Assembly: GCF_036588685.1 (NCBI RefSeq)
Contig: NC_086376.1
Coordinates: 87,523,630 to 87,587,629, forward strand
DNA: 64,000 bases
Source of the DNA: Mytilus trossulus
Lineage: Eukaryota
Direction: 5' to 3'
Shown here piece by piece: positions 17,515-59,758 of this stretch; position 1 is the stretch's first letter, and each line of letters starts with the position of its first letter. The position numbers and the translations under genes were made by a program. The notes below the pieces were generated by a model. That model saw nothing but the letters and a program-made list of their open reading frames with translations. It made no database searches and was not told the origin of the DNA.

Positions 17515-17706
17515 TTATTCCGTTTTAAATATTTGTGTTAACTTTGGTGGCCTGTGCTCCTCTATTCTACGTAAGCCAAGATCATCTCTGTCAGCATCCA
17601 CAATCTCTCTCTGTCTCTGTCGAATCAGTCGTCTCTGCCACTGAGTGGCTAGGACAATGGCACTGGTGGCATCACTGTTACTGGAATCTTCAGGAGCCTT
17701 TAAACC
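17515..17706 (-). CDS. vinculin/alpha-catenin-like gene, terminal coding exon
   Basis: ctttag|GGT TTA AAG..; 63 codons GLKAPEDSS..QWQRRLIRQRQRE..DDLGLRRIEEHRPPKLTQIFKTE, then TAA. Confidence 0.8.
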   Translation of the reverse strand, partial: GLKAPEDSSNSDATSAIVLATQWQRRLIRQRQREIVDADRDDLGLRRIEEHRPPKLTQIFKTE

Positions 17707-35700: not shown

Positions 35701-38700
35701 TTTATCCAAATATTAAACATCTGATGATATCAGATAGTAATATCTACATTTTCACAGCAATAATTTGCCAGATATACATTGTAGTATCATTAAGACAGCA
35801 ATTTCAAAATTTAAACATGATTGCCAATATAAACCTTGTAACACAGAGAAGTTCTTCATGTACTGTTCTAAATCCTCCATGTTTGTTGTCATTCTCCTCA
35901 ACTGATTGGATTGAAGGCTCTAATGTGTCAGTATGTGTACATTCTTCAGGTGTTTTAACACCTAAAACTTTATTCAAGTCTGTGAAATGTAAAGAAGATA
36001 AGTAACAAAGGGTATATGACAGCTTTATATTAAGAAATAATTCATGGCAGCTGTAGATTTGTTTTCATTAAACCATGGGTCGGGCATTTATATTCGATTA
36101 TTTTACCCTGAGCCTTAGCAAGGGGTAAAATACAAATATAAATGCCCAACCAATGGTTAAATGAAAACAAATCTAAGGCTGCAATGAATTATTTCGATTC
36201 TAATAGGACAAATTTCGGTAATTTTGTTTACCATGAAAGCCCTATACATACAATATTGTTTTTGGCTGTTCCATTTACCAAATTTTGATAATATAAGTAA
36301 TATTATATAATTCATTGATAAATTTTTTAATAGCATTTTTCACTTATATGTTTTCTTCCAATGTAATTTTATTCGTTCTGAGGCATATAAGAAGCTTTAA
36401 AACGCCGGGTATTTACATTTGATTTTTTGTGTACGGAAACATACTTGTGACATCCTCTTTTTTCATTGCCATGCCAAGACAATAACATCATTTTGCCGAA
36501 TTTTCGTTTTATGAAATTTTACCAGGAAAAGTAATTTGTAAATCTACTAATTTGTTTATTTTGCTGTAGAATAGACAAAAATATATTGTATTTGAATCTT
36601 GGCCTATGTAAACTAGGGGTTTTAATGTCGAAAATTGAGAATATCTGGTAGTATGAATAAGTTTGTTGTAACTCAGAACAGCCATATTACTGTATTTGCG
36701 CTAAAGGTAGATATTTATAGATTATTACATGGCATTTTCCATATGGCCCTGGTATCAGCCCTAGACTCCCATATCAAGCCAGAGGGCTTGATATGGGTCG
36801 TGGGCTGATATTACGGACCATATGGAAAATGACATGTAATAATCTATTTATCACATATTTTCAAGCAAGAGAAAGAAAAAAATAGCATACACCAAATTAT
36901 GTTTAATATTTCATCACAAATTCAAAAAGACATTTAATGAAAAAAAAATCAAAATATGTATCACCATGCACCATGAGTTAAAAAAAAAAGTTCGTATCAC
37001 AGTACGTAAGCAACGTTTTGTGATAAGATTCTGAAATAATTAACAATAAATATATTTATTCTAAGAATTGCAAATATTAAACGACTTAAAGTGTTACATT
37101 ACCAATGTTAAATATGCTTTATAGGAAGAATACCATATCGCTACTCATTCCAGTGTGGCGTCAAATTTTGACATCTAAATTCTTTATGACATCAAAATTT
37201 TACAAAACTTTTGTGATTTTCACTATTGATATTTACTTATTTCTACTACAGCAGATTCGTAAATTTCTAAATTTCTTTTCATTGTGTTCTCATTTTTAAT
37301 TTTTTGTATGAATTTACATGCATCGTCATTTGACACAGGCACTTGTCTCCAAAAAAAAATCCTATACACCTTAATGTTATATTAAGGTATATATAGGGAA
37401 AAAAAATTTGAGACAAGTGCCTGTGTCATTTGATCTGAGAGAAAACTCTCCTGGTCGTTTTGCTGCTTTGGCTGACAACTTGTTTACAAATTAATTTTGA
37501 TTGACAGGTTTACCGGAAGTTAAACTCGGGGGCTTGATATGGATTTCGAAGGCTGATATCGATCTCGGCCCCGAGGGCTGATAACCAACCTTGACTTCCG
37601 GCTATTATTGGCCATGCAAAAACGTACATATCAGTATAAAATATGTGATAAATTGTGATTATACTGGTTGACGATAATAGGTCATCATATTATAATTCAA
37701 ATTTCCATATGTGTATTAAAATGTCTGTGTGTTTTACTTTAAAATTATTTACTGGCGCGAAAAAAAATTACTCTTTAAAAATATTTAGGTTATTGCTGTA
37801 TGACATCAATATGTTATTTGTACATGTCCTATGGCATTTCAGAGATAGTTCAGTTAATACCCAATAGCGTAAATACAACTATACAAGACTCTGGAGATAA
37901 TTTAGATAATAACTATCATTACTTTTAACTAATCCTGGCTTTAAATCTTTCATCTGTTGTATACACACTAAAAGTTGACGAACTTTAGCTGCCCATGAAA
38001 CTTTCTGTTTTGTGAATTCTTCCATTGTACTTGATAAATCGCCATCTTCTACAATAATATAAAAATAGGTAAAGCACAGTGGTTGAAATAATTTAACCAC
38101 TTGTCTTAATATATTCTGTATTTTTTTTTCAAATCAAGGTTCTTTTATAAAAGGTTGTTGAATACCTGACAAGTAAAAATTAATATGTTAAAAGCTGGAA
38201 TAACCAAAAAGATTTAACTAATTATATATATAGTCTTACTGGCATATTTTTTTCAGAGATGTTTCATTTTATCAATTCATTTCTTTTTGTAGATTGAGGA
38301 AAATCCTATTTTCATGGATATTTGATTTTGTGGGTTGCTGAAGTCAGAATGTTCTTAAGTCTTTAAATAAATAGCTTGGTTCACCTATATCCTGGATATC
38401 CATGAACATTAGTATTCTAAGAATAATTATTCATACAATATACAGAAAAGGCTCCTGTTTTTCACCTACCAGTTAATTTTTTGACAATATCAATAAGCTG
38501 AGGAGATATACCAGTTACTTCATCTAAACACTTTCTAACAGCTGATCGCTTGTCAAGTTCTGTAGACAGCTGGATACCTTGTAAAGTTTTCTGTCGTAAA
38601 CTCATCAAACTTTCACTGAATTTACTGAGAGACAACTGAAACTCTGACATGCACATTTGTTTTTCTGCATCTACAAAAAATTTTCAAAGAAAGTGTTATG

Positions 38701-41700
38701 AAAAGAACATTTAAAAATATAAAAAAAAGTCAATCATTCAAAATACAATCAAAGTGCTTGTAAGTATTGAATGATAAAGATTGCATTAATTTATCAGTGG
38801 GAAATAAAATTAATAAATATCGCATTGAATTAAGCATTGGTTGTGGTTGATACAACTACAATTTTGGACAATGGGAGACAACTCCAATTTTTAAAGATTG
38901 CTTTTATAATGACATTGTTTATATTTTTAGAACAGATGTCAGATGCATGCACCTTGCATAAGTTATGTAATTTTTCTTGATAGGTGTAGCTTTACTTTGT
39001 AATTGGAATATCTGAGCATACATTACATTTATAAGTTTCTGGAAATGTTCATGGATAAGATGTATAGAATGTTATGATCAATGCACTATATTTTGTGTAT
39101 CAAAAAAGGTAGTGATAAGCCTTAGAAGATTTAGATATCAAGTCAGTCCCATAAGGTTTTGATTGTATTCCATGCAATCTTTACCTAAAAATGGAAAAAA
39201 CATTAATTTGTCACTGCTAATATTTTTTTTGTGATTGTAGGAATTTTTCAATAAGTTGTATTGAGTTTATTAGGAAAAGTTGCAGTACCAAAAAAAGCAA
39301 TGGCAAAGTCCATGCTTTGGTTAGGAACAACTAAATAATTATTCAAAATAAAAAAAAAAAAAAAAGATGCACAGCAGCATTATATGATTAAGAAGACATT
39401 TAAAAATAGTTCACTCAGAAAGAGTTGCAGATACAATATTGGTATTTTCAAAATTATGCTATGGCAAAGTCTGTGTTTTGGTATTAAAGGAAAACCCCTA
39501 AAAAAAAATTATTCATATCAAAAGTATAATTACCTGTTTTAGCTGTCCTAACTTCCACAGCGCTATCTGACAGTTTATTTAACAATGCTGTATACATTAA
39601 TGTCTGCTCTTGTAATATATCCATACATTTTATACTCTGAAAATAGAAACACTTATTTTTGACATTCCTTTTAGTGGATGTTAACACCATAAACATAAAA
39701 TTTTGCAAAATTAGTAACTACATTCATATATCAAACATTTTTAAAATACTTTTAGATCATAAAAATATCTACATATATCTAATTTTTCTGTACATATTAC
39801 CATTGCACACATTAATGGTTTTCATTTTAGAGTAAATTCCTTTCACACCGCCTATCCTGACAAACTTCACTTGATATACTGTATGTGTTTTACTCATAAC
39901 TTAAGGCCCTACACTGACCTATCTTTGTTTACTTCTATGGCAATTGGTCTCTTTTGGAGAGTTTTCTCATTGGCAATCATACCACATATTTTTTTTTATA
40001 TTGACACCAGATTTTTAATATAACCTATAAATTACTATTATCCTAACTGGGAAGTATCTTTATTGAATCAACCTGGTTTGGACTAACCTTAACAATCCAC
40101 TGTGCAGAAAGTAGACCAAGTCTACAACATATGTATGTCACGGTTATCTTATCCACTTCTCTCTTTTTCCTGGAGGAAGTGGATTTCATACTGTCATATA
40201 ATCCATCTAGATCTAAACAAAGGGATGTTGCTAATTCAGAAACACTGTCATTTCTGAAATAATAAAGTCATATCCATGTAGCTGTTGTTTATTTAGATAA
40301 ATTGACCAGTTGGAGAAATCATATCTACAACTAACTGAATCCACTGAAAGAGATTACCAGAAACAAAAAGTTCCTATTAAAAAGAGGTGAGATTCAAGGT
40401 ATGGTCAGGGAAATATCAATCAAATTTAAAAAAAAAACCATGTCCATGTTACAACTTTACATTATCAAAGAATAAATCATAAAGCTATGACATTAAAATC
40501 AATGATGAACTTACCCAAGACATGCACTGTGTAAGAGATTCCTAATCTGACTATTCTGATGCAGTATATGTTACTTACCCAAGACATGCACTGTGTAAGA
40601 GATTCCTGATCTGACTATTCTGATGCAGTATATGTTACTTACCCAAGACATGCACTGTGTAAGAAATTCCTGATCTGACTATTCTGATGCAGTACATGTT
40701 ACTTACCCAAGACATGCACTGTGTAAGAGATTCCTAATCTGACTATTCTGATGCAGTATATGTTACTTACCCAAGACATGCACTGTGTAAGAGATTCCTA
40801 ATCTGACTATTCTGATGCAGTACATGTTACTTACCCAAGACATGCACTGTGTAAGAGATTCCTGATCTGACTATTCTGATGCAGTATATGTTACTTACCC
40901 AAGACATGCACTGTGTAAGAGATTCCTGATCTGACTATTCTGATGCAGTATATGCTACTTACCCAAGACATGCACTGTGTAAGAGATTCCTAATCTGACT
41001 ATTCTGATGCAGTACATGTTACTTACCCAAGACATGCACTGTGTAAGAGATTCCTGATCTGACTATTCTGATGCAGTATATGTTACTTACCCAAGACATG
41101 CACTGTGTAGGAGATTCCTGATCTGACTATTCTGATGCAGTATATGTTACTTACCCAAGACATGCACTGTGTAAGAGATTCCTAATCTTACCATTCTGAT
41201 GCAGTATATGTTACTTACCCAAGACATGCACTGTGTAGGAGATTCCTGATCTGACTATTCTGATGCAGTATATGTTACTTACCCAAGACATGCACTGTGT
41301 AAGAGATTCCTGATCTGACTATTCTGATGCAGTACATGTTACTTACCCAAGACATGCACTGTGTAAGAGATTCCTGATCTGACTATTCTGATGCAGTATA
41401 TGTTACTTACCCAAGACATGCACTGTGTAGGAGATTCCTAATCTGACTATTCTGATGCAGTATATGTTACTTACCCAAGACATGCACTGTGTAGGAGATT
41501 CCTAATCTGACTATTCTGATGCAGTATATGTTACTTACCCAAGACATGCACTGTGTAAGAGATTCCTGATCTGACTATTCTGATGCAGTATATGTTACTT
41601 ACCCAAGACATGCACTGTGTAAGAGATTCCTGATCTGACTATTCTGATGCAGTATATGTTACTTACCCAAGACATGCACTGTGTAGGAGATTCCTGATCT

Positions 41701-44700
41701 GACTATTCTGATGCAGTATATGTTACTTACCCAAGACATGCACTGTGTAAGAGATTCCTAATCTTACCATTCTGATGCAGTATATGTTACTTACCCAAGA
41801 CATGCACTGTGTAGGAGATTCCTGATCTGACTATTCTGATGCAGTATATGTTACTTACCCAAGACATGCACTGTGTAAGAGATTCCTGATCTGACTATTC
41901 TGATGCAGTATATGTTACTTACCCAAGACATGCACTGTGTAAGAGATTCCTAATCTGACTATTCTGATGCAGTACATGTTACTTACCCAAGACATGCACT
42001 GTGTAAGAGATTCCTGATCTGACTATTCTGATGCAGTATATGTTACTTACCCAAGACATGCACTGTGTAAGAGATTCCTGATCTGACTATTCTGATGCAG
42101 TACATGTTACTTACCCAAGACATGCACTGTGTAAGAGATTCCTAATCTTACCATTCTGATGCAGTATATGTTACTTACCCAAGACATGCACTGTGTAGGA
42201 GATTCCTGATCTGACTATTCTGATGCAGTATATGTTACTTACCCAAGACATGCACTGTGTAAGAGATTCCTGATCTGACTATTCTGATGCAGTATATGTT
42301 ACTTACCCAAGACATGCACTGTGTAAGAGATTCCTAATCTGACTATTCTGATGCAGTACATGTTACTTACCCAAGACATGCACTGTGTAAGAGATTCCTG
42401 ATCTGACTATTCTGATGCAGTATATGTTACTTACCCAAGACATGCACTGTGTAAGAGATTCCTGATCTGACTATTCTGATGCAGTATATGCTACTTACCC
42501 AAGACATGCACTGTGTAAGAGATTCCTAATCTGACTATTCTGATGCAGTACATGTTACTTACCCAAGACATGCACTGTGTAAGAGATTCCTGATCTGACT
42601 ATTCTGATGCAGTATATGTTACTTACCCAAGACATGCACTGTGTAGGAGATTCCTGATCTGACTATTCTGATGCAGTATATGTTACTTACCCAAGACATG
42701 CACTGTGTAAGAGATTCCTAATCTTACCATTCTGATGCAGTATATGTTACTTACCCAAGACATGCACTGTGTAGGAGATTCCTGATCTGACTATTCTGAT
42801 GCAGTATATGTTACTTACCCAAGACATGCACTGTGTAAGAGATTCCTGATCTGACTATTCTGATGCAGTACATGTTACTTACCCAAGACATGCACTGTGT
42901 AAGAGATTCCTGATCTGACTATTCTGATGCAGTATATGTTACTTACCCAAGACATGCACTGTGTAGGAGATTCCTAATCTGACTATTCTGATGCAGTATA
43001 TGTTACTTACCCAAGACATGCACTGTGTAGGAGATTCCTAATCTGACTATTCTGATGCAGTATATGTTACTTACCCAAGACATGCACTGTGTAAGAGATT
43101 CCTGATCTGACTATTCTGATGCAGTATATGTTACTTACCCAAGACATGCACTGTGTAAGAGATTCCTGATCTGACTATTCTGATGCAGTATATGTTACTT
43201 ACCCAAGACATGCACTGTGTAGGAGATTCCTGATCTGACTATTCTGATGCAGTATATGTTACTTACCCAAGACATGCACTGTGTAAGAGATTCCTAATCT
43301 TACCATTCTGATGCAGTATATGTTACTTACCCAAGACATGCACTGTGTAGGAGATTCCTGATCTGACTATTCTGATGCAGTATATGTTACTTACCCAAGA
43401 CATGCACTGTGTAAGAGATTCCTGATCTGACTATTCTGATGCAGTACATGTTACTTACCCAAGACATGCACTGTGTAAGAGATTCCTGATCTGACTATTC
43501 TGATGCAGTATATGTTACTTACCCAAGACATGCACTGTGTAAGAGATTCCTGATCTGACTATTCTGATGCAGTACATGTTACTTACCCAAGACATGCACA
43601 GTGCAAGAGATTCCTAATCTGACTATTCTGATGCAGTACATGTTACTTACCCAAGACATGCACTGTGTAAGAGATTCCTGATCTGACTATTCTGATGCAG
43701 TACATATTACTTACCCAAGACATGCACTGTGTAAGAGATTCCTAATCTGACTATTCTGATGCAGTATATGTTACTTACCCAAGACATGCACTGTGTAAGA
43801 GATTCCTGATCTGACTATTCTGATGCAGTACATGTTACTTACCCAAGACATGCACTGTGCAAGAGATTCCTAATCTGACTATTCTGATGCAGTATATGTT
43901 ACTTACCCAAGACATGCACTGTGTAAGAGATTCCTAATCTGACTATTCTGATGCAGTATATGTTCAAACAGTTGTGAGTCTTTCAATGGAATGCTGTCAT
44001 TTGGCCACACTCTTCTGTCACAACCTTTAGTGTAAAGGTCAGAGGTCAAACCTTCAAGGTCATCCAGAACACAAAATATTCTTACAGCCCATTCTCTGCA
44101 AAGTTGTTCAAGTTGACATTTATCTTGATGAGTAGCTGCAATAAAGAAAGCTACATTAACATATATGTAATGTGGTTTCATAACTCTACAACAGTTTAAT
44201 ACAGGGTGATATCTTATATTTTTATAACTTTGACAATTATTCATCATAAGTTTTTTTTTTTTTTTGGTTTCAAACATTTTAAAAGTGAAATTGTGAAATA
44301 ACATTTTTTATAAATAATCATTTTTTGTTCATTTTTAACAAAATAAGCTCAAAAACATTGATGATGCACCATTGGCTTGCAAGTAGATAATTCAACTCAT
44401 TTGAATCTGTATTCATGGGAACTTCAATTTAAAATTGTTTCTATAGGACTTTTGGTAATTTGGATAGATGTTTTTTTTTTAAATATGTTATAAATAAAAT
44501 AACAGATTTTGAGTCTTATCAGTGAACATATATTTGACAGCTAATGCCCCTTAAAAAACAGGTCATCGGACTTCCGAGATAAACATGAGTGCTGACAACT
44601 CATAAAATTACTATGGTTACAAAAAAATAGTACACTATAAGCCATAGTAATATTATCTAATGTTAATAACAGGACAATGACAATCTTTAGGACTTACATG

Positions 44701-47700
44701 ATTTATATATGACACCTGATGTTGTTACTATGGTAACTGTAATGTTATCTAACTCGTTACTATTCTCTTGCAGACGTTGACATCTTTCTTCCCCAATATC
44801 TTTATCACCAATACTTTCTGTTAAATCCATTAGTTCTGATATACTTGTGGTGTGTTGTTTTAATGAGTCAATCTACATAATTAAATCACACGAAATAGAT
44901 ATAGGAATATGTGGTACGTGTGCCAATAAGACAACTCTCCATTCAAGTAACAATTTATAAAAGTAAACCATTATAGGTCAAGGTTTGGCCATTTTATTAA
45001 GATAACCAGAAAGGCCATTATATCATCTTTTAAAATCATTAGAGTCATTATTTGGACCACAGAGTCTTGTGCATATGATATATCAGTACTCTCAAAAAGT
45101 TCAATTTACTAGGATCTTTTTATAAAATGTCAAAGTTTTGATCAGAACTTTAATTGGACACCATTATATTGGATGATTTTACCATGTTTAAAAGGACATT
45201 ATAAAATGAACATAATTGTTGTACTATTGCCAGAACATATTCATTTTGTCAGATGGATAAAGGCATGAAGCCCACTAAAATACTGTTGGAATCTGTTAAA
45301 AGTCATCAGTTGGTATCTATGCATGACAGGAAATAGTTCTAACCTGTTGTTTCATTAAGCGCTGATCAGATGACGTGGTTGACTGATAAACAGGGTCGGA
45401 AATGTCCTTCCATTGGTCCACTGTAACATCTATAAATACTCTTATCTTCTCAATCTTCAATGGAAAGCAGTGGTATTAGACGAATGCAATGTGTATACTC
45501 AATAAATGTAAAACTTACACTTTATTAGATGGCTTGATTTTTAAGATCAGAAAGTGCATTTTTGTTATATTTTTTCTAATTGTGAGAGTAACATGAGGCA
45601 GATGTTACCGCAAAAAAGTTTAAGGTCTGTTTTAAATGTCTCCTATCTTTTATTAATCAAACCCAAATTTTCGTGAAATTGTATGTTTTATGATAAATAA
45701 TTGAAAAACAAGTGTATTGCATTCGTCAAAAAGCAAACTATCAGAGATTCTTTTTGTATCTTAGTCTTTTTATCTAGATTTATGCTGCAATGACAATAAT
45801 ATGATTATTTGTAGATTCCAATTTTCTGAATCATCAGTCATTTTGTGTTATAAATCATAATTTCAGACTCCCAAATCAAAAGTCAATGGAAAATAAGCAT
45901 CTTTGGTTGTTCAATTTTGAGTACTTATATCTACCATATAAAGAAAATGGCAGAATTTGCAGTTAAAGTAATGTCAAAAACCTTTTTCTTGTTAGCTAAC
46001 ATTCAAATGTAAGCTAAGGGTGTCATTTAAGTACAAAGCGCTGTTCATTTTGATATAAAATCATCATGTTCTAGTCTTAAATATGGTTGTATGATTTCCC
46101 TCTGAACATTATTCTATCTATCTTTTAAGGACCTACCTTGACTTCCCATAGTTGACTTAGAGAACAAATATCAGAAATATCATCTTGATCACCCATTGCT
46201 ACATATTTTAATTTCTCTGTCAGATCTGCAACTAATTCATCTACCTCACTGCACAAGGAATGTATATTTCTGTTAACAAATAAAATTTTAAATAAGAATA
46301 AAATTATTTATTATTCCAATCATGGGCCCATGATGGGCAACATGACATGTATACACACAAAACAATGCCTTGTGATTTGTAACAGAAAAACTTATTTTTA
46401 TGTTGAAATGAAATATTAAAAGTTTTAAGATTTTATCAAGTCAGATTAAGAGCTACATATATTTCTTCATTTAAAATGAGTCATGTACATTAAATTCCTG
46501 TCAGGACCATAAAATCATTACAATTATCATTGTTATTACATATATAAATTATCATTTCATCTAACATTTATTTATACAAGAAAGTATTTACATAGAAATG
46601 TTGAAAATACACAAATATTACTAAAATTTCGGAAACTTTTCGTTATAGGAAGTATTTTAGTTAATTTTTGCTAACTTTTTTAAATGTTAAAACATAACTC
46701 ATACAATAGGCTTTACTCAGTTTTGATTCTTGTACTTTTGTTAATTTAAGCTCATTGCTGGTTTTTTTCCGAAACATGTAAATGGTCCAGCAAAATGGAA
46801 TCAATTCACAGAAATAAACAAAAAATAATTCACAAACATGGCTATTTGTCTCATGGACACATACCACATCTTCTTATATCTATAAATGGTCAGAACAAAA
46901 CCATACCTTCTTTTGGCAGTATCAGAGTGTACCAAAAGACATTCAGCACTATCTACTATATGATTACTCCAGCCTAACAAATCTCCGCTCACAGACTTTA
47001 TAACATGCTTATCTCCCTTGGTTACAGCACCAGTTATCTTTTCCTTTATATGAGAGGTAGTGGTTGAATCTACAGAATCAAAAGTGCATTCATATAACAG
47101 GTTACAGAAGAATTGTAACTGAAAAGATCAATAAATTATAAAATTATAAGTCAATCTAAATTTATGAAAATGAGGTAAAATGCAAACGACATACATGCCA
47201 CATAGAAGCGTCAGACCATATAAACATTAAGGAACAAAATATAGATAATTTAGATCTACTGGTTAACCATGTTAAATTTGAAAAAAATGTACAAATAATC
47301 TATATCTTTGTCATCTATAACATGCAGTAAACATACCCAGTATATAATGCTTTCAGAAACATTTTTTACAATTGCATAAAAATACATGGGCTCAAAGTGT
47401 AGTGATACCATATTTACCTTGGATTCATTTATTTTCATATGCAGACTTAAGTGGATACTTTTATTTCATGAATAGTAATGAATACACAGTTTCAAAATAT
47501 TCAACTATAATTTTACTCCATACCTTGACTAGACTTTAACCTTGATGTGCGTTGATATGATTCTACAGGCTTCCTGCTCTGTTGATGGGATTCCTGTGGC
47601 TTAACTTTTGTTTGATGATATGATTCCTGAGATGAGACAGATTGCAATGATTCAGTACTTTGCTGAAATGCACTTCTTTGTAAGGGGACTACTTTTTGTA

Positions 47701-50700
47701 GCGTAGACATAGATGAGTGTGTGAGAAAGTCCTCCTTACTGCAGATATCCTCCTGTAGGAATCTGTTGTCAAGTGGTAGGGATTTCAAAGCACCAGTTGA
47801 TGAAAATTTAATGTGACTAGAACTGGATGTTTTCCTCCTTTTCTCTGCTTCTATAATGTGAAGGAAACATTTTAAATTAAAACTGTGGTTTTCTTTCTTA
47901 CATATTATTCTAAAAGGCATTGCTTGCAAATAAATTAGTGTTCTGTTAGAAGACATTAAAGTGGGTTTCATTGGGGTCTAAGCGTGACGCGGGATTGCCA
48001 ATTTTTTGTAAGCGGGACACGTGAAAGTCAAATTAATGTGTCGTGAAAACCGGAAATGAGGTCTTGCGGGACCCGGGAAATGACAAAAAAATATGATTAT
48101 TTATACGTACATAGTGTAAGCGGGATACGGGAATCTGATTAAACAGTAAGCGCGATCCGGGCTCGGAACCCCCAAATGAGACCCCCATTAAAGTTGAAGT
48201 TTTCCTTCTTTCGGCAGCTTCTGTAATGTATTTTTTTTAATAAGAAAACATATTTATTCTAAATATGATTTTAAATGGTATTGCCTAATGAATGAATGAG
48301 AGTTCAGTTTAAGATAATTTTTCACATCCATTCCTTGCAATAGTTTCTATTTGTATATATAAAATCTATACACAAGCATACACTTTTGAATATTATAGTT
48401 AGCAATTTTTTTCAATCTTGTGGCTGTAAAATCTTTGATTGTTTGTCTTTAATCATAAAATATGATGTTTAATGCTTTTCATCAGAAATTAAAAGCTAAA
48501 AAGTTTAAAAGTATAAAAACCTGCAAATCTGAGATTCCGTCTCTCTGGACTAAGTATGCTTGGCTGATTATCTGCATTTAAACCATTTTTCACTTTTCTT
48601 ACACATTCTAACAAATGTGATAATCTTCTAAGTAATGATTCTACAGCTGAATTACTGGTAACATCAGAGTATACATGAGTTGATCCTGCTCTTATACCAG
48701 TTATTGCTGTAAGTTGAAAGAAAAGAACTCAAGATTATAAATATTTTATTAAACAATGGCTTTCACAAAAAATCTAACATTGTAAAATACTAACGTTGCA
48801 AGTTTGCTCTCGTCTTAAGTGTTAAAAAATGGAGACATTTGTCAATATCAATTGAACAGTTGGTCCTAAATGTGACAATAGGTAAAAAGTTACATAAACG
48901 AAAGTCAAAGATGCAATTGTATAAAAGCTGATATGATGGACTTATAAATTCTAGAAAAAACACTTATTTATGTATGGCCTTTTGATCAAACCAGACTTCA
49001 AGCTTGATGACAAAAGGTGGAAGTAAAATGATCATGTGGTAGGGTTAAAACAATATAGAGAAAAATGGATTGATTAACATAATAATTACAGTCAATACAT
49101 CTCAAAATTTATCTTTCATTACGATTTTCTGTAATTTAAGAAGAAGAAAAAAACGCTGCCAATTCACTTATTATTATGGATTATATTTTACTTGGATAAT
49201 AATTATTATTTTTATTTTCATAGACATTAGATTTTATGGTTTTGCCAAAGTCTGTATACCAGCCTTTAGAAAATGTGTACATTATTGACCATTTTAATTT
49301 GTTTTTAACCTATACCCACAAAATATATGGAAATTGAATCCACTGTATATAAATATGAACAAACCTTTATGGAGGCTTTTAACATAAACCAATAATCCAT
49401 TACGATATAGTGGATCATCATGGCTGTCGACAATTCTCTCTCCAACCTGACACACACGTCGTGATCTACCCACCAGAGATTTTATTGCACTATTTATACC
49501 TTCTACATCACAGGTCATTACAAATCCTCTACAGACACCTATATCTTCTTCAATTCTTTTCTCTGAATTAAATAAAGGGAACTGATAATATATATGCACA
49601 TGCTGACAAAATATATCATAATTGGTTGACAATATATAGAATACTCATCTATGAAAACCACCTACATGACCTATTGATCTTCAAATACTGTAGGTTTCAG
49701 AAAAAATCAGATTTTTTAATATCAATGCAAAAATAGCCAAAAAAAACAACTTGAAATTCAAAATTTGATAGCATTAAATGTATGCAAATTTTTATGAAAT
49801 TTTAAAAATCAATTTCACAATTTTGTCTATTGTTCAACCATCCCAATAATAAATTATATAAAATTCCTTAACTTACAGTATGCAGGGGTTAATTTTTTAA
49901 GTTGAAATTAAATATACCAATCTTTCACCATTTTAAGACAAATTATATTATTACTAACCAGAGACACCCATAAATATCTGAGGATCTGTCATTTCATCCA
50001 AGATTTGCATCAAAGTATTCAACTCAAATGACCATTCTTTCATCAGAAGCTTGACATGACGGACGGCCATTTTGTCTAACTGGTCCCTTGCCATACATAG
50101 AGCTGCTGGAACAATGTCAGGATCCAGTCTTTCAAGATGACATACACATGTTCTTATTACTCTCACACCTATTAGATATTTTCATATTATATATGTATAA
50201 GAAACTGTTAAACTGTAAAGCCATTTGATCAAAACAAAATCATGCACTGAAAGGTCCAATTAATGTTACCATGTGATTGTCCAATTTTGAACATCAAATA
50301 AATGTCTAGCCAAAACAGGGGCTAGACTGTATTCATGTAAATATAAATTTACACTTTCCGTTGAAAGATATCCATCAAGTAATTTTGCAACAGTACAAAT
50401 TTGTTATTATACTGCCATATTCAACTTATTTCTTTATTGTTGTTTTTTTTAAATTTTCAATCACATTGTGTATAAGTTTATAAACATTTGGTGGAGGCAA
50501 ACTCAAATTAGAGAATGGGATCCAATTTTAAGGCATATAGACAGATATATAGACAATGGATAACCTTAGTGTTTATTAAAAGTGTTGTTGCATTTAATGA
50601 TGAATTAATAAATACAGAAAAAAATCCACTCTAAGCAGAAAGTGTTAACTGATGAACTGAATTGACAGAAGAGTTGACCACTCTGTATAGATAATATACA

Positions 50701-53700
50701 TATATATTCTTTAATGCGGTTTACACTAAACTAATAAATCTTACGTGTGGCATCAGTTGAGCTAGCTGCAGCAAAGCTGGCAACTTGACACATTTTATCT
50801 GCATGTTCTTCAAACTCTGTTATCAAAATGTCATTTTCTCCTATAGACTGATCCTGTTGAATGATAAAATATACATTCCAATTAATACCAAATTAAAAAA
50901 CAAAACAAATAAAATCTGGAGACTGTCAAATTGATCCAAGACTGTTTTACAAATAATAAGACATTACTTTCAGCCAAGTCTCACCATAAGACTTTAGACA
51001 AAGTTCAGAATCGGGCACTATGTATCATCACAGGTGCTATGAAATCAACACCAATAAAAAGTATGGAGGATATAACAAACATACCCCCAATAGGAAAGAG
51101 AAGGGAGTGCAAAGCCATGATACAGGCCGGCAAATATCAGTGTTCACAAGACCACCCAATGAATACTAGACTAAAACAACTCTCATCAGGCAGACTAAAA
51201 AGATCCAGCTTTACATTAGAGACAAGAGCATTGCAAAGAAAACACCATGAAGCCCTACCAAAATATATAGAACACATAGTTTTCACAAAGAATAACACCC
51301 CATGTGAAGAAAAACTTGGAAATGTCACCATCCAGACCTCAGTTCCGCTCATTACCACCAGAGATGAACAGACTAGTAATGTAAAGAAAATACTTACAAT
51401 GAGTATGCTTGAAGAACAGTATCCTTCAGAAACTTGGGTAAGAGTATATACAGATGGGTCAGCCACAAATGCCACAACAAATGGAGGGGCTGGTATATAC
51501 ATTAAGTACCCCAATGGAGATCAACAATCAGAAGCAATACCAACAGGCCTACATTATTCAAACTACAAAGCTGAAGAAGAAGCCATTACTAATGCTGCAC
51601 ACTCCATCAAAAACAAAATCGATGATACATCTCAAGTAGTATTCCTGACTGATGCCCTCCCTGTTCTACAAGCTTTGAAGAACGACAAGCTGCCTCAACT
51701 CCAACAAGCTTTATACAACATCAAAAGTCTGACAACAGTAATTCAGTGGATCCCTTCACACTGTGGAGTTTGGACTAATGAATAAGCCGACAGATTAGCA
51801 AAGTATGGTGCTGAACAACAACAGGAAGAAAATCCAGTCTGCTTTACAGAGATGAAGACTATCATAAAATCTCTGTTCAACACTCCACAGCAACAAGATA
51901 GTTACCACCAGCTAACAAGATCTGAACAAACCACCATATTTAGACTGAGGACAGGACCAACATCTACACAAAGTCATGAAAGTTGTTCCATCTCCTATGT
52001 GTCCTTGTGGAGAAGCAGACCAGGATACAGCACACCTCTTCCAGTCATGCAATTTCCATCAGGCATTGAGAGATAAGATATGGCACTCAGTAACATCACT
52101 TGAAGAGAAGCTATACGTACCAGTGGATGCCCTACAGAAGACCACCAGATTTGTTGAGGAGACTGGTATTCAAGTGTAAAGGCGAACGATAAGAAGAAGA
52201 ATAAGACATTTATCAATTATGCTTGCTTTAAAAGATCTGAATTCTTTTAAATAAAATGACACATCAGATTATTTTACCTCGAAATAACATGTCAACAAAT
52301 TTTATCGTAAAGTTAACAGAACATTTTCTCTTCTTGATGTCCCAACTAAATAAAAAAAGCTCATCTTTTACTATTAATTTTTCTATTCTAGTAATATATA
52401 TTTCGAGCATAGGGAATACAAAATCCTATTAAGAGTATCTTTCATGAGTTTCTTGACCTATTAACAATTTCCATTACTCCAAGAACGATGTTATCAAATG
52501 TAGTAATGTATAAATAGCAGAGGAGTATATGAAAAGAAAAATGGTGTTGTACCTGTTTAGGATACATAGCTGCCTTTATCAATCTTTCTATAGGTTCTGT
52601 TGTTTCTTTGAATATATCTACTATCAAGTGAAGTAAACTCATGTTGACGTTCTTCTCCAGTTCACAAAACTCATCAATCAAGGATTCACAACACTCATCA
52701 TAATCCTCTCTGTACAAAATAAAATCTCATTATACATTGTAGTGCTGTGTATTCATCATTATTCTGGATATACCATTTTTTATCTATGAGTAGGTATATA
52801 TGTGATCTTTGATGGTTATATAGGCTTGAAAATATAATTTGGCAAATCACAAAAAATATAGGTTCTCATTCTTTCAATCCACAAAAAATGAATGAATCCA
52901 CAGTAATCAAAATTTAGGTAACTATTAAACAAGAATGTCTCCAAAGTACATGGATGCCCCACTCGCACTATCATTTTCCATGTTCAATGGACCGAGAAAT
53001 TGGATAAAAAATATAATTAGGCATTAAAATTAGAAAGATAATATCATAGGGAACATGTGTACTAAGTTTCAAGTTGATTGGACTTCAACTTCATTAAAAA
53101 CTACCTTGACCAAAAACTTTAACCTGAAGTGGGACAGACGGACGAACGAACAGATGGTCGAACGAACATACAGATGAACGAACAGACACACAGACCAGAA
53201 AACATAATGCCCCTCTACTATTGTAGGTGGGGCATAAAAACAATTACCTTTCACAATGAGGGAAATTTATTGTAAGCAATAATGTGATAAAAACAAGAGT
53301 GTCCATGCTGAAGTGGCTTCTTGCTTTACTGACCATGACTGAATTTTATGTTGAAATCTTTCGGATTAAAATTAGAAACAAATAAAACAGAATATATTTT
53401 GACACATCTTAAAATATCTTTTGATTGTATCTAATTTTCCCTTTCTGTTACTTATATCTTTTAAATGTATTGTTTGTGACACATGTTCTTTTTTCAGTTT
53501 CATTATATATATACTGACCTCATTCTTTGTATATCTGTTTTCTCTTTGATAGAAATGGACAAGGCTAATACACGACCTTTAAGTTGTAAAATCTACAAAT
53601 AATTATATATTTATCACATTAAAAACTGGTTTTAATGGCACTCCTGCATTTCTTGTTGGCAAACATAATATAAATACATGGATATTCTTATACATTAGTT

Positions 53701-56700
53701 TAATTTTTCAATGTCTACTTTTGTTTTTTGTATTTATTAAAATATCAATCTCCATATCACAATTGTTGTATAAATCCTCAATTGGGTTGAATGAGACATT
53801 CCACAATACTTTTCAACTTTAAAATTGGTTTGGTATTTTTAACTTTTTTGTTTTGAGCTTCACTGTTGAGTCTTTTGTTGACAAAAACCTGCATCTGGAT
53901 TTAAAATTATAAACCTGGTTTCTTTGATGTTTTTTTTCTTACCATCAACTCAGGATTCAGATTTCATATAAAACCAAAAAGAATGCTATGTTTGATGTTG
54001 CACTAAGCATACAATCAGTGCACTATTATAAATTATTATGTCTACTCACCCTTTGACAATTAATGATTATAAGATTTCTATATGTATCTGTACAGAGATG
54101 TGCCACTAACATACTATGTCTGATAATTCCTTCTGTCCAACTTTCTACATCTATATCTAAATCTTCTCGGTTTTCTGTAGACAGGGCCTCTAATATCTAA
54201 AATTGTTTGCATTAATAACATATTTTTTATAACACCCTTGATAACATATATATCCCACAGTTCTTGAAAAGAAGTGGCTTGAAAGTTTTGAAGACCAAAA
54301 TTTTGGCATTTTGCAAATAGAAATAAAAGTGAGTAGCAGCAGATTTTCATGGATGACCTGAGAATATTTTTGAGAGCCATGCTATCCTATTTGTATGCTC
54401 TTATATAGATATACATTTAAAATCATAACATTGAAATACACACCTGACACTAGGGTGAAAATAGGTTGAATATTGATATTTGATGTAAAGTGTGATCACT
54501 TCAGCACATAATGCATGAAGACTTACATAAAACTTTAAAAAAGAAATACAGCAATAAAAGACTTGTTCCTATGATATAAGGATGTATACGCAAAAATTAA
54601 TAAAAAAGTTGTGGCAAATATTGTTGTAATATGTGTATGATGAGTATTTCATATTTACTGTGACACATATACAGAATAGTGAAAAATATTGTCTAAATAA
54701 GTGTATGAGGTGTATGTCATATTTATTGTGCCACATATACAAAATAATGACAATAATTGATTATTTATGTTCAAGAACCATTTTTAAAATAAAATGTCTT
54801 TACTTAAAACATACCTGATCAATTTTAGAAACAAAGTATCCAGGTTCCTCTACATCTAAATAATCTTCTTCAGTAAATTTGTTTTCTATGGCCTCAACTA
54901 TATCTCTAACAGCAGACAAAACTTGGTTTATCACATAGGACTTGCTCACCTGTCAAAAAGTTAAAGTCTAATAATAATCAAGATTAAAAATGTTAAAACT
55001 AGGTAAAGTGGATTCTATTAAGGATTTCAGATTTTAAGTACAGTATTTTGTGTTTCCGTTAGAGATGTTTGTTCTCATCATTTAAATCTTCAGTTCAGGA
55101 TCTAAAATAAAGGTTATGATTACTTTTGGATCTGCTTATTCATGCAAATATACTGAACCTAACCGTGTAATACTACTTACATGAGCCTGTGCATTACTAG
55201 GATATTTTATACAACTTTGTAAAGCTACACTTATTGATGGAATGGATTTCTTCAGTAGATTGAGAGCTGTAATTATTTTCTCCCTTTGTCTATCTTGACA
55301 CAGATCTTTTTGTCTCTTGTTTGCTAAAGATGTTAAAATGGAAGTAGTATCTGTGAAACTCTGAAAGTAAAACCAAGATGTGCTTAAGATGTTAGAATGG
55401 AAGTTGTATCTGTGAAACTCTGAAAGTAAAACCAAGATGTGCTAAAGATGTTAGAATGGAAGTAGTATCTGTGAAACTCTGAAAGTAAAACCAAGATGTG
55501 CTAAAGATGTCAGAATGGAAGTTGTATCTGTGAAACTCTGAAAGTAAAACCAAGATGTGCTAAAGATGTCAGAATGGAAGTTGTATCTGTGAAACTCTGA
55601 AAGTAAAACCAAGATGTGCTAAAGATGTTAGAATGGAAGTAGTATCTGTGAAACTCTGAAAGTAAAACCAAGATGTGCTAAAGATGTCAGAATGGAAGTT
55701 GTATCTGTGAAACTCTGAAAGTAAAACCAAGATGTGCTAAAGATGTCAGAATGGAAGTTGTATCTGTGAAACTCTGAAAGTAAAACCAAGATGTGCTAAA
55801 GATGTCAGAATGGAAGTTGTATCTGTGAAACTCTGAAAGTAAAACCAAGATGTGCTAAAGATGTTAGAATGGAAGTAGTATCTGTGAAACTCTGAAAGTA
55901 AAACCAAGATGTGCTAAAGATGTCAGAATGGAAGTTGTATCTGTGAAACTCTGAAAGTAAAACCAAGATGTGCTAAAGATGTCAGAATGGAAGTTGTATC
56001 TGTGAAACTCTGAAAGTAAAACCAAGATGTGCTAAAGATGTTAGAATGGAAGTAGTATCTGACCAAGATGTGCTAAAGATGTCAGAATGGAAGTTGTATC
56101 TGTGAAACTCTGAAAGTAAAACCAAGATGTGCTAAAGATGTTAGAATGGAAGTAGTATCTGTGAAACTCTGAAAGTAAAACCAAGATGTGCTAAAGATGT
56201 TAGAATGGAAGTAGTATCTGTGAAACTCTGAAAGTAAAACCAAGATGTGCTAAAGATTTTAGAATGGAAGTAGTATCTGTGAAACTCTGAAAGTAAAACC
56301 AAGATGTGCTAAAGATGTTAGAATGGAAGTTGTATCTGTGAAACTCTGAAAGTAAAACCAAGATGTGCTTAAGATGTTAGAATGGAAGTTGTATCTGTGA
56401 AACTCTGAAAGTAAAACCACTGTCTTATTAGTATGGATTAAAAATAATAAGGAAAGGAAGTTTGCTAAAATTGCTAAGTTTATTTATTCCTGCATTCTGC
56501 TTTTGTATAACAAGCCCTTCTGTCATGTAGTGTTTTAGCTACTAATTTTAACATTGTCATAAAGCAAGAGGTTTGGCATGTCATTAAACCAGGTTCAACC
56601 CACCATTTTTTTTAATGTCCTGTACCCTATCAGGAATATGGCAGTTTTTATCAAATACTTTGTTTCTAAATGTGTTGGTGTTTGTTTTGTTGCACCTCTG

Positions 56701-59700
56701 TGTTCCTGTTGTTTTTCTCTTATAGTTATTAAATGTGTTTCCATCAGTTTTGGTTGATGACCCCAATTTGTTTGTTTCTCTATTGATTTATGAATTTTGA
56801 ACACCAGTATACTACTGTTGCATTTATCAATAATTCGAAATCCTTTTCAACATGTGTCTGGTTTATTAATATGATTACCTTAAATCTAGATAACAGATCA
56901 GTCATATTATTAACATGACTTAGGAGTCCAACAGTTTCTGAGACAGTATGGGCTGCAGCCAGAATTCTCCTAACTTCATAATCATCAGAGACAAGTAACA
57001 CCTACAAAATAGTAAACAATATTGTTTTCACATAATATGCATACAGTTTAGGGTTCTTTATTTGTTCCAAGTAGATAAGACATTGTTAATTTATCTTCTT
57101 GCATTTATAATAAGAAGTACTAATACATGTATATATATTTACTTTTTTATTTATCTATTAAATGTGAAGTTGGCCAAAAAAAATCAAAGTTTTCAAAATA
57201 TTATGCTTCTGAGGTCCTAATATGAACTCTGTTAATCGACCAGAAAGTCATACAAAGACAAAAAAAAATCAAATCTAGTATCTTTATTGTTCATTTCAAA
57301 ATAATCAGGAAAGCAACTAGCATTTCATGGACTACATCTTACTTTCATTGTTCCTTGAAGAACATTCTTTGAGGCAGTTATAACTCGACTCTTATTTTCT
57401 TTACTAGCTGATGCCGTAACTCTCTGTGATGCTATATATAAATCACTGCTAGATAAATCTAAGATCTCACAAGCACTCTCCATCTGTCTCTTCAGCTCCT
57501 GTTATAACATATAAGTGAATATATATAAATCACTGCTAGATAAATCTAAGATCTCACAAGCACTCTCCATCTGTCTCTTCAGCTCCTGTTATAACATATA
57601 AGTAAATATATATAAATCACTGCTAGATAAATCTAAGATCTCACAAGCACTCTCCATCTGTCTTTTCAGCTCCTGTTATAACATATAAGTAAATGTTCAG
57701 TGGTTGTCATATTTATTTTTTTTCGCAACTGTTTGTTATAAATTAGGCCATTAGTTTTCTCAATTGAATTGATTCATATTTTCATGTGGGTAACCATACA
57801 GTTTGATTTTTTCACGTTATTGAAGGCCTTACAGTTGCCTATAATTTCCTACATCCACTTCATTTGAACTTTGGTGGATAGTTGTCTTGTTGGCTATATA
57901 CCACATTCATGACCATAATGACATCTTCTAATTTTTTTTACAAAATTTATAAACTCAAATTCTGATTTTGTCTCTGAATTTAGCTTCAGTCAGCGCTACT
58001 AAATCTTTAGTTTTCTGTGTAATGTTTTGTGGACTGTTGTTTGTTGTTATTTTTCTTTTTGAATATCTTGCATGTGTCTTTGTATCTAATCAATGGGTTT
58101 TGATTACAATTTTGTAATGATTGAAATTTGTATTTAAAATAATGGTTTTAAAACTAATATTTGCCAAAATAAATTTAAACTAAATTGATTTTCCAGTCCA
58201 ATTCTAGCTGGTTCTTTTTACAATTAAATACAGTCTGAAAGGAGAAAAAAATTATAGAAATACATAAACCAACTGGTCATAAGATATTAGATTTTTGCTA
58301 AGGTTTGATTATCTCTTGCATGTCGCATGTCTTAGTGTCTAGTATATTTAACCATAAGTTACAAGAAATGTTTGTTGCCTACATCATCTGCAGTCTTGTT
58401 AGCTCTTTCTTTTCCTAGTGTCACAAGACGTTCTGCAGCCTGCATAACCATTTCAGCACAGGGCCCCATATCTGTTTGAATGCCATCTGAATGGTCAAGA
58501 ATGATCAACAACGAAATCTGAAAAAGAAAATATTTTTGAAATGATTAGTGATATATACAAAAAAAATGATTTATATTAAAGTATCAAAATAAAAATATAA
58601 GTGAACCAACATCTTGTGTTGTGATTGTGCGGTAGGGTAAAAACGAGTGGATACCGCTAGGTATTCACAGTCATCTTGAAAAAAATGAATATGTCGACAA
58701 TAAAGACAACAACACTCATGTTTTTACTGTGTAGTATCTATTTATTGGGTCTACATGTTTCGCCTAATCGATAGGCATCATCAGGACAATTGTACAAAGA
58801 AATATGACAGTGAAGTATGAATTTAGCGGTTAGCGGTTTTAACCGGAAGTACAAGTTAAACAATGGTGGTTATGGTGACGTTATATAAATAGATAGTGAA
58901 AGTGAAAGTAAATTACAATAGAAAATATATAAACATGATAAATAGAAATGTTCGTGTTTTCTTGAATGGTAACAGCATCTCTTGTGGTTGACATCTATCC
59001 TGTTCTGTGTAGTTAATCTCATGAGAGGTCTTTGGTGGTATTGCACGTTGTAGTTATCTAAATAAATAATCATGTCAGTGAATTCCAAATTGGACAACAC
59101 CTCACTGTTCACTCCGTACAGTCAACTGGCTTCGCTCTGGGACCCTTGAGTTACTGCTTCCAATTGCGTCGGAAATGGTGTGAAGTGTATGATCGTCGCA
59201 CATTTTGGAAATTAAAAAAAGTGGTAAATCCGTAAATATTTAATTATGAGTTGTGTTAATGATTTTACTTTTGATGTGGTTTGATGTTGAATCTGTACAT
59301 GCTGTAAGAGCTTCCAGCAGGTTTCTTCTTTCTTAACCGGTGGTAAAGTATTGTAATAGTTGAGACTCTGTTAAATCTTTATGTTAATTTTGCGTAGTGT
59401 CATAAATTCAGCTAGGTGGTCATGATTTTTTAATAGTGTTATCAGCGGTTGTAGCGATTTCTTCTTCTCTTGCTCCTTCTCTTCTTGGACAGTGTGGAAT
59501 CTTGGTCATTTTCAGGAAAAGATAAGGAATCTTGGTATTGGTCAGTAGCTGATCTCTTGCTGGATCCAGAACTTTTTCAAGGGTCGATTTGACTTGTACC
59601 CAAAACTTTAAGCTGAGGCAGGGCAGGGCAGACAAATTCTTGTCAAATCAGCATCTGGTCAAATTGACATCCTACATGTATGTAGTCATTTTGGCACCCA

Positions 59701-59724
59701 TGTCAAATACATGTATGTAATTGT

Positions 59725-59758
<34 letters not shown>

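What the first reader, a model, noticed from the sequence alone, without database searches (positions are those of the whole stretch)
40509..57694. Splice-junction minisatellites: three independent tandem arrays, each built on an exon-intron boundary of one gene
Seen: the only non-transposon minisatellites I found in 64 kb (64-, 59- and 87-bp units, unrelated in sequence) each consist of an exon edge plus its splice signal, and each extends into the intron. They give 54 donors at exon 19, 18 acceptors at exon 5 and 3 acceptors at exon 3. About 38 kb of intron has no comparable purely intronic array. In all three, only the exon-proximal site preserves the ORF, and the original intron flank remains at the distal end. 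Inference: a mutational process is targeted to splice junctions (for example co-transcriptional R-loops or breaks, with slippage or rolling-circle amplification). Alternatively the arrays act as copy-number-tunable splice decoys or poison sites coupled to NMD. Purifying selection explains why no arrays are purely exonic, but not why none are purely intronic.
Basis: partly seen in the sequence, partly recalled or inferred. Interest (0 to 1): 0.92.

Follow-up and report, generated by a model that had tools for sequence, protein, structure and literature searches.

The report
Splice-junction ("mirage") minisatellites in mussel gene
Three tandem repeats in one bivalve vinculin/alpha-catenin-like gene are each copies of an exon edge plus its splice site; this repeat type is already described ("mirages" in amphioxus, F7 and a few other human genes), and where RNA could be checked the mRNA is spliced normally at the genuine copy.

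Summary
TRF finds three arrays at the stated coordinates: 64 bp x 54, 59 bp x about 18.6, and 87 bp x 3. They lie in a minus-strand gene of at least 28 exons (60336-17521). The gene belongs to the vinculin/alpha-catenin family, and its 1,500-aa orthologues are in pearl oyster, scallop and clams.

Each unit is an exon edge plus a short piece of intron carrying the splice signal. This gives 54 GG|GTAAGT donors, 18 acceptors and 3 acceptors. Every distal site would lead to a premature stop codon.

RNA contigs from three runs join exon 4 to 55360 and exon 2 to 57498. So the exon-adjacent acceptors of arrays 2 and 3 are the ones used.

The kind is known: "mirages" in amphioxus, and human F7, IFI6, CBS, LMNB2 and PDGF. 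This scan has already reported it many times elsewhere in this same genome.

Placement on junctions is nominally non-random in the window (P about 7e-4 to 6e-3, uncorrected for how the window was picked). A broader duplication test is not significant, and 14 arrays in a random 200 kb show no clear junction type.

No evidence supports a decoy function. A junction-targeted mutation process remains untested.

The parts
17521..60336 (-). Host gene: vinculin/alpha-catenin-family gene of about 1,500 codons, at least 28 exons. ATG at 60336, last coding exon 17706-17521.
   Evidence: tblastn of bivalve orthologues P0006 (Pinctada, 1519 aa), P0004 (Ylistrum, 1508 aa) and P0014 (Mactra, 1556 aa) is collinear from 60336 to 17521. 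Collinear exon hits to Pfam PF01044. Alpha-catenin chains in PDB match at E=6e-6. Splice-site model.
40509..43964 (-). Array 1: 54 units of exactly 64 nt. Each is the last 58 nt of exon 19 plus GTAAGT. Unit 0 (43964-43901) is the genuine exon end with its donor. The array fills 3,398 of the 3,653 nt of intron 19.
   Evidence: There are no indels and all 54 donors are intact. Units 9-25 recur as units 33-49, a 24-unit block duplication.
43907..44135 (-). Exon 19 (acceptor ...ttattgcag|CTA, donor TGG|gtaagt, phase 2).
   Evidence: P0004 residues 911-986 and P0006 924-1000 align to the very end of the exon. Model. Not checked with RNA.
40088..40253 (-). Exon 20, the partner of the exon 19 donor. 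Only 255 nt of unique intron lie between it and array 1.
   Evidence: Best in-frame acceptor tatttcag|AAA. Its translation aligns to P0004 992-1040, directly after exon 19 (E=6e-4).
55322..56419 (-). Array 2: 18 acceptors (56404...55360). The unit is 59 nt: about 15 nt of intron end, the first 39 nt of exon 5 and about 5 nt of filler. It has a 3-unit higher-order period and one 41-nt truncated unit. The two edge pseudo-units share a variant (TTAAGCA).
55181..55360 (-). Exon 5. The genuine acceptor is at 55360, the last of the 18.
   Evidence: RNA contigs of X8 and X9 join 55360 to 56879 (skip 1518, CT..AC on the + strand). The PacBio RNA run X20 shows the same exon 4 end. Orthologue residue 169 onward aligns from the first codon.
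56879..57001 (-). Exon 4.
   Evidence: RNA joints 56879|55360 and 57001|57343. Pfam PF01044 positions 118-158.
57433..57694 (-). Array 3: three units of 87 nt, each 21 nt of intron end plus the first 66 nt of exon 3. Acceptors at 57672, 57585 and 57498.
   Evidence: tblastn also hits the pseudo-copy at 57675-57592.
57343..57498 (-). Exon 3. The genuine acceptor is at 57498, the last of three.
   Evidence: RNA contigs of X8, X9 and X20 join 57498 to 58383. Orthologue residues 76-127 match the exon exactly.
47826..48229 (-). Possible old fourth junction duplication. The exon 14 acceptor segment (47859-47826, cacattatag|AAGCAGAG...) has a 79%-identical copy at 48229-48196. A GC-rich MITE-like insert lies between them (about 48190-47990).
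   Evidence: Local score is 16.5, against a null 95th percentile of 13 and a 99th of 23, so it is suggestive only.

Best explanation
These are junction ('mirage'-type) minisatellites. Three times independently, a 59-87-nt segment straddling a splice junction of this gene was duplicated in tandem. One of the three carries a few filler bases at the copy junction, which suggests end-joining repair. The duplicates then grew by unequal exchange. Because each copy carries its own splice signal, all extra copies lie inside the intron as long as the spliceosome keeps using the site next to the real exon. The protein is therefore unchanged and the arrays are tolerated. Duplications lying wholly inside exons would be removed by selection. 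I take the arrays to be by-products without a function of their own. Shown: the anatomy, that the seeding exon edges are the older sequence, use of the genuine acceptors for arrays 2 and 3, and block duplication inside array 1. Inferred: how the first duplications arose, neutrality, and use of the first donor in array 1. Why junctions are favoured over plain intron is not explained. A bias of the seeding duplications towards exon sequence, followed by the selection filter, is my preferred guess.
For: Arrays and unit anatomy. The units are unique to this locus in the genome, so they are not a dispersed satellite or transposon. The exon edges copied into the arrays align to orthologous proteins of three bivalve species, so the exons came first and the arrays derive from them. 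RNA contigs of three runs join only the exon-adjacent acceptors. Array 1 has a duplicated 24-unit block and array 2 has a 177-bp higher-order period and shared edge variants, which are the marks of unequal exchange. A DNA contig of another organism (X2) joins 55376 to 56371 with 9 other letters. That is 985 nt fewer, equal to 16 x 59 + 41, and so fits a much shorter array 2 there, VNTR-like. Published precedents show the same anatomy and normal splicing: amphioxus Adh3, globin, TnC and PGBD5 'mirages', human F7, IFI6, CBS, LMNB2 and PDGF, and human internal tandem repeats at exon-intron boundaries.
Against: Uniform placement of duplications plus selection does not by itself predict three of three arrays on junctions (nominal P about 7e-4). 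So an unexplained bias remains, unless this is selection of an extreme window. Array 1 has no RNA evidence. Contigs cannot exclude minor use of pseudo-sites followed by decay. An 89-nt RNA contig over 55369-55457 sits at 12-20% of the mRNA depth. It could be unspliced pre-mRNA, boosted in depth because the units are repeated, or an isoform using an upstream acceptor. Copy numbers come from one assembly only.
Confidence: 0.8

Rival explanations
1. A mutational process aimed at exon-intron junctions, or at exons, seeds these duplications far more often than elsewhere. Candidates are transcription- or splicing-linked breaks, stable RNA:DNA hybrids over exons, or exon-positioned nucleosomes. The arrays would still be neutral, but their placement and their clustering in particular genes would reflect that process. 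This concerns the origin and is compatible with the best explanation.
For: Three of three short-unit arrays with 3 or more copies lie on junctions, and there is none in about 34 kb of ancestral intron. The units are mostly exonic, with short intron parts of 6, about 15 and 21 nt. There is a possible fourth, older case at exon 14. Unchecked notes from this scan report genes with 4-11 such arrays elsewhere in this genome. The literature calls the generating mechanism unclear.
Against: The window was selected for looking odd. The 'any local duplicate' test is not significant (P=0.5). The short intron parts are not significantly short (my combined estimate is P about 0.13 for three cases). A random 200 kb shows 14 arrays and no clear junction type. 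Nothing here measures breaks, R-loops or chromatin.
Confidence: 0.3
2. The arrays work as copy-number-tunable splice decoys. Pseudo-sites capture part of the transcripts, and these carry premature stops and are destroyed by NMD, which sets the expression level. Alternatively, 54 donors could act as a U1 snRNP sink.
For: All pseudo-sites keep intact consensus signals, and all lead to premature stops. A short RNA contig covers the proximal part of array 2, while other single-copy intron sequence has no depth.
Against: The assembled transcripts of three RNA runs use only the genuine acceptors. Intact signals are expected anyway in young, homogenised arrays at 96-98% identity. The extra RNA depth over the array is what repeated units in unspliced pre-mRNA would give. 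In published cases pseudo-sites are silent or only the nearest one or two are used, and no regulatory role has been shown.
Confidence: 0.07
3. Assembly artefact: the arrays, or their copy numbers, are produced by the assembler.
For: The 24-unit block that occurs twice in array 1 could be a duplicated assembly path. No long reads could be laid.
Against: The units carry ordered variants and higher-order periods. Contigs of independent DNA and RNA runs break 29-30 nt into array 3, at 57462. That is what a 31-mer graph does where a repeat starts, which implies at least 2 copies in those samples too. Junction arrays are reported at many other loci of this genome by notes of this scan that I did not check.
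Confidence: 0.04

Closest known systems
Amphioxus 'mirages' (Adh3, globins BflGb6 and BflGb9, TnC, PGBD5)
   Same: Minisatellite-like tandem duplications whose unit spans an exon-intron boundary, at either the 5' or the 3' boundary. Several can occur per gene. Splice signals are reiterated, mRNA splicing is normal, copy number varies, and edge units escape homogenisation.
   Different: A different phylum (mollusc). The arrays here are larger (54 and 18 copies, against 2-6 in the globins). Instability and somatic variation were not tested here.
Human F7 intron 7 VNTR (37-bp units)
   Same: The first unit spans the exon-intron boundary, giving 5-9 identical donors. Only the most upstream, genuine donor is used.
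   Different: The F7 unit is mostly intronic (4 nt of exon plus 33 nt of intron), whereas array 1 is 58 nt of exon plus 6 nt of intron. Array 1 has 54 copies. Donor choice in array 1 was not checked with RNA.
Human IFI6 (6-16), CBS, LMNB2 and PDGF junction minisatellites
   Same: They reiterate donor sites 10-26 times in the intron. Either only the genuine site is used, or the genuine site plus the nearest one or two pseudo-sites.
   Different: These are all donor-side cases. Two of the three arrays here are acceptor-side.
Internal tandem repeats at exon-intron boundaries of human segmental-duplication genes
   Same: Tandem repeats at boundaries that alter intron structure and can activate cryptic sites.
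   Different: Those cases are linked to alternative transcripts and the formation of new introns. Neither is seen here.

Membership tests
Junction ('mirage') minisatellite | Head-to-tail tandem array of a short unit (tens to about 150 bp) | tested here: met
   TRF: 64 bp x 54, 59 bp x 18.6, 87 bp x 3. Unit tables.
Junction ('mirage') minisatellite | The terminal unit is the genuine exon edge plus the adjacent intron, and the exon part is real coding sequence older than the array | tested here: met
   Orthologues from three bivalve species align across the copied exon edges, and exon limits coincide with the alignment limits.
Junction ('mirage') minisatellite | The splice signal is reiterated in the copies | tested here: met
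   54 donors, 18 acceptors and 3 acceptors counted.
Junction ('mirage') minisatellite | The mature mRNA is spliced at the genuine, exon-adjacent site | tested here: met
   Met for arrays 2 and 3: joints 55360|56879 and 57498|58383 in RNA contigs of X8, X9 and X20.
Junction ('mirage') minisatellite | Copy number varies between individuals (VNTR behaviour) | tested here: inconclusive
   One DNA contig of organism B lacks 985 nt (17 units) of array 2. De Bruijn contigs can collapse repeats, so this is weak.
Vinculin/alpha-catenin family (Pfam PF01044), for the host gene | Match to the family profile over the protein | tested here: inconclusive
   Exons were searched one at a time. Hits are collinear at profile positions 118-158, 167-205, 427-496 and 495-550, scoring 16-31 bits each, all below the 38.1-bit whole-protein cut-off. 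PDB alpha-catenin M-domain chains match at E=6e-6. Orthologues are named 'Vinculin' and 'CTNA2-like' by their sources. The joined protein was not searched.

The most novel reading that the evidence does not exclude
The mussel genome has a mutation process coupled to transcription, splicing or exon chromatin. It seeds short tandem duplications preferentially at exon-intron junctions and clusters them in certain genes. Under this reading, junction minisatellites would be a systematic, measurable class of germline mutation rather than scattered accidents, and this gene would be one of its targets.
Probability: 0.25. Interest if true: 0.7.

Novelty: new member of a known kind. Interest (0 to 1): 0.33.

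Why it matters
In itself this is another example of a described oddity with no visible effect on the protein. It is useful as a natural test of splice-site choice: 54 identical donors and 18 identical acceptors, each acceptor unit carrying its own branch-point-like CTAAC or CTGAC motif, compete in one gene. Taken with the many similar loci that this scan has noted in the same genome, it is also material for asking why duplications that straddle junctions are so common in some invertebrate genomes. The literature leaves that question open.

Tried and rejected
- The search for related loci on metagenome contigs found no relative. The tool notes that records of the window's own genome, or of one very near it, may be left out.
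- A plan to collect exon loci through Pfam hits in the genome failed for the same reason.
- The genome-wide enrichment test therefore remains undone.

Tests that did not support a claim:
- Junction 60-mers against intronic 60-mers with any duplicate in the same intron: not significant (3/54 against 10/217, P=0.5). Transposon copies in intron 24 inflate the control.
- Rolling-circle growth: not favoured, because of the block duplication and higher-order periods.
- Dispersed satellite or transposon origin of the units: rejected.
- The exon recruited from a pre-existing array: rejected, because orthologues conserve the exon edges.

Exons were searched one by one by reference and the joined step was left out. 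In one search the exons were concatenated only to compute G+C.
Full report
WHAT IS THERE

The window is G000:C4:87523630-87587629 of a 1.30-Gb genome with about 31% G+C. TRF reports three strong arrays at exactly the coordinates given:
- 40509-43964: period 64, 54.0 copies, 96% matches.
- 55322-56419: period 59 with a 177-bp higher-order period, about 18.6 copies.
- 57433-57694: period 87, 3.0 copies, 98% matches.

The three units are unrelated to each other. A search of the whole genome found them only at this locus, so they are not dispersed satellites or transposon parts.

THE HOST GENE

Stop-free stretches on the minus strand gave collinear exon-by-exon hits to Pfam Vinculin PF01044 and to alpha-catenin chains in the PDB.

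A HMMER search with one exon (window:49960-50181:-) returned proteins of about 1,500 aa. Their sources name them:
- 'Vinculin', Pinctada imbricata.
- an uncharacterised protein, Ylistrum balloti.
- a hypothetical protein, Mactra antiquata.
- 'CTNA2-like', Mya arenaria.

tblastn of these proteins on the window is collinear from an ATG at 60336 to 17521 on the minus strand.

Exons were searched one at a time by reference.

ANATOMY OF THE ARRAYS

Array 1:
- It has 54 units of exactly 64 nt. Each is the last 58 nt of exon 19 plus GTAAGT.
- Unit 0 is the genuine exon end.
- All 54 TTGG|GTAAGT donors are intact.
- The array occupies 3,398 of the 3,653 nt of intron 19. Only 255 nt of unique intron remain before exon 20 (40253).
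- Units 9-25 recur as units 33-49, a duplicated 24-unit block.

Array 2:
- It has 18 TTTCAG|AGTTTCA acceptors from 56404 to 55360.
- The unit is about 15 nt of intron end, the first 39 nt of exon 5 and about 5 filler bases at the copy junction. Units read CATCTTG where the ancestral flank reads GACAGTG.
- One unit is truncated to 41 nt.
- The two edge pseudo-units share a variant.

Array 3:
- It has three units, each 21 nt of intron end plus the first 66 nt of exon 3.
- Acceptors lie at 57672, 57585 and 57498.

In each array the unique intron flank is at the distal end. Every distal site would give a premature stop:
- Array 1: GGG TAA straight after the exon end.
- Array 2: stops at codons 11-28.
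- Array 3: TAA at codon 27, even though 87 is a multiple of three.

ARE THE EXON EDGES REAL, AND WHICH CAME FIRST?

The copied exon parts align to the orthologues:
- The first 22 residues of exon 3 (ELKRQMESACEILDLSSSDLYI) match DYSRQMLSACEILDLASSNLYI.
- The first 13 residues of exon 5 (SFTDTTSILTSLA) match SFTDAAAQLCTLA.
- The last residues of exon 19 align up to ...LLHSACL.

Exon limits coincide with the alignment limits. Exon 20 aligns to the residues that follow directly. The exons are therefore ancestral and the arrays are derived from them.

RNA EVIDENCE

One run search and one laying call were allowed. I laid 54000-58700, which covers arrays 2 and 3. Contigs of two probable RNA runs (X8, X9) and one PacBio RNA run (X20) give these joints, with GT..AG ends on the minus strand:
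- 54196|54815
- 55360|56879
- 57001|57343
- 57498|58383

So exon 4 is joined to the last of the 18 acceptors, and exon 2 to the last of the 3. Contigs drop rare variants, so minor use of pseudo-sites is not excluded.

An 89-nt contig over 55369-55457 has 12-20% of the mRNA depth, while single-copy intron has none. Repeated units in unspliced pre-mRNA would produce the same result.

Use of its first donor is inferred from homology and from the F7 precedent.

A DNA contig of another organism (X2) joins 55376 to 56371 with 9 other letters. That is 985 nt fewer, equal to 16 x 59 + 41, as if array 2 were 17 units shorter there. Contigs of X2 and X8 break at 57462, which is 29-30 nt into array 3. 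A 31-mer graph breaks like this at the start of a repeat. Both points are indirect.

IS THE PLACEMENT MORE THAN CHANCE?

Inside the gene, TRF at a lower threshold finds five tandem duplications with units of 25 bp or more:
- the three junction arrays;
- two purely intronic two-copy ones, at 23236-23296 and 54616-54750.

Intron 24 also holds transposon-related tandem duplications of 502 bp and about 807 bp.

A scan of all 54 junctions for copies in the adjacent intron picks out only four. The null 95th percentile is 13 and the 99th is 23:

| Junction | Local score |
|---|---|
| Exon 3 acceptor | 58 |
| Exon 5 acceptor | 56.5 |
| Exon 19 donor | 60 |
| Exon 14 acceptor | 16.5 |

The exon 14 case is an old 79%-identical copy at 48229-48196, with a MITE-like insert between the two copies.

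Under uniform placement in the array-free gene:
- A unit of these sizes spans a junction with probability 0.076-0.116.
- All three on junctions gives about 7e-4.
- Three of five gives 6e-3.

Using the array density of a random 200 kb (14 arrays with a period of at least 25 bp and about 3 or more copies), 0.08-0.23 junction arrays are expected in this gene. That gives P(3 or more) of about 7e-5 to 2e-3.

These figures are not corrected for the window having been chosen because it looks unusual. With hundreds of windows read, about one such gene could arise by chance.

A broader test, whether a 60-mer has any duplicate in the same intron, is not significant (3/54 against 10/217, P=0.5).

In the random 200 kb none of the arrays shows a convincing junction signature by a flank open-frame check, and I inspected two of them by eye. 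Most are transposon-borne or satellites. The sample is too small to measure enrichment.

WHAT IT IS AND HOW IT WORKS

The simplest reading has three steps:
- Three independent short tandem duplications arose across junctions. One has filler bases typical of end joining, and none shows clear microhomology.
- The copies grew by unequal exchange, as shown by block duplication, higher-order periods and edge units that escape homogenisation.
- The arrays are tolerated because the exon-adjacent site keeps being chosen, so all extra copies are removed with the intron.

Duplications lying wholly inside exons would be lost to selection. This explains why exon-derived arrays always carry a splice site along.

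It does not explain why plain intronic short-unit arrays are missing here. A seeding bias towards exon sequence or junctions is possible but untested. I found no evidence that the arrays regulate the gene.

COMPARISON WITH WHAT IS KNOWN

The kind is described.
- They recur in amphioxus globin, TnC and PGBD5 genes, at both 5' and 3' boundaries.
- In these cases splicing is normal, length is unstable, and the generating mechanism is 'unclear' (PMC3087553; PMC3902484). The original paper, PMC117041, is not held.
- In humans, the first unit of the F7 intron 7 VNTR spans the boundary, and only the most upstream of 5-9 identical donors is used.
- IFI6, CBS, LMNB2 and PDGF are similar (PMC1557585).
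- Boundary repeats in human segmental-duplication genes are catalogued in PMC2812944.

A text search found no paper linking this repeat type to Mytilus.

This scan has already reported the same thing on other DNA of this same genome many times. Seventeen notes contain both 'mirage' and 'minisatellite'. Some describe 4-11 arrays in one gene, and the follow-ups reach the same classification. I did not check those loci.

VERDICT

This is a new member of a known kind, of modest interest. The open question is the cause of the junction bias and of the clustering of such arrays in particular genes.

Noticed in passing
window 47990-48190 (-): A GC-rich MITE-like insert with repeated 'cccgcttac' motifs. 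It sits between the exon 14 acceptor and its old upstream copy.
   Followed up: no
window 23853-24654 and 31770-33057: Purely intronic tandem duplications with long periods in intron 24: 502 bp at 97% identity, and about 807 bp at 75-88%. They belong to a dispersed repeat also seen as a 234-bp x 2 array in L037:7058-7527. They carry repeated open frames such as ...KPNLATIIIGVSSLKNVWRD...
   Followed up: partly
window 56512-56982 and 57611-58081: Parts of introns 4 and 2 reach summed contig depths in the thousands to tens of thousands in a DNA run, where neighbouring bins show about 5-10. This indicates very high-copy repeats next to arrays 2 and 3.
   Followed up: no
G000:C1:26001466-26027886; C3:16309078-16365028; C4:20128862-20149986: Long tandem series of near-identical open frames for protein-kinase domains, spaced about 1.7-1.9 kb apart. 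Dozens of copies occur at each of the three loci.
   Followed up: no
L027:1806-10000 and L040:2730-10000: Large satellites in the random sample: 153-bp units x at least 53 at 99% identity, and 382-bp units x at least 19 at 93%. Both run off the end of the fetched piece.
   Followed up: no
window 54944-55181 (-): RNA contigs of X8 and X9 read GTAAG at the exon 5/6 joint, where canonical splicing of the window sequence predicts GTGAG. This is best explained by a synonymous GTG>GTA variant in the first codon of exon 6. X20 shows the canonical joint.
   Followed up: partly
window 55360-56419 (-): The exon-derived part of each array 2 unit contains TTCTAAC or TTCTGAC about 35 nt before the next AG. 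Each unit is thus a complete module of branch-point-like motif, pyrimidine tract and AG. The genuine acceptor must now draw its branch point from the neighbouring pseudo-unit.
   Followed up: no
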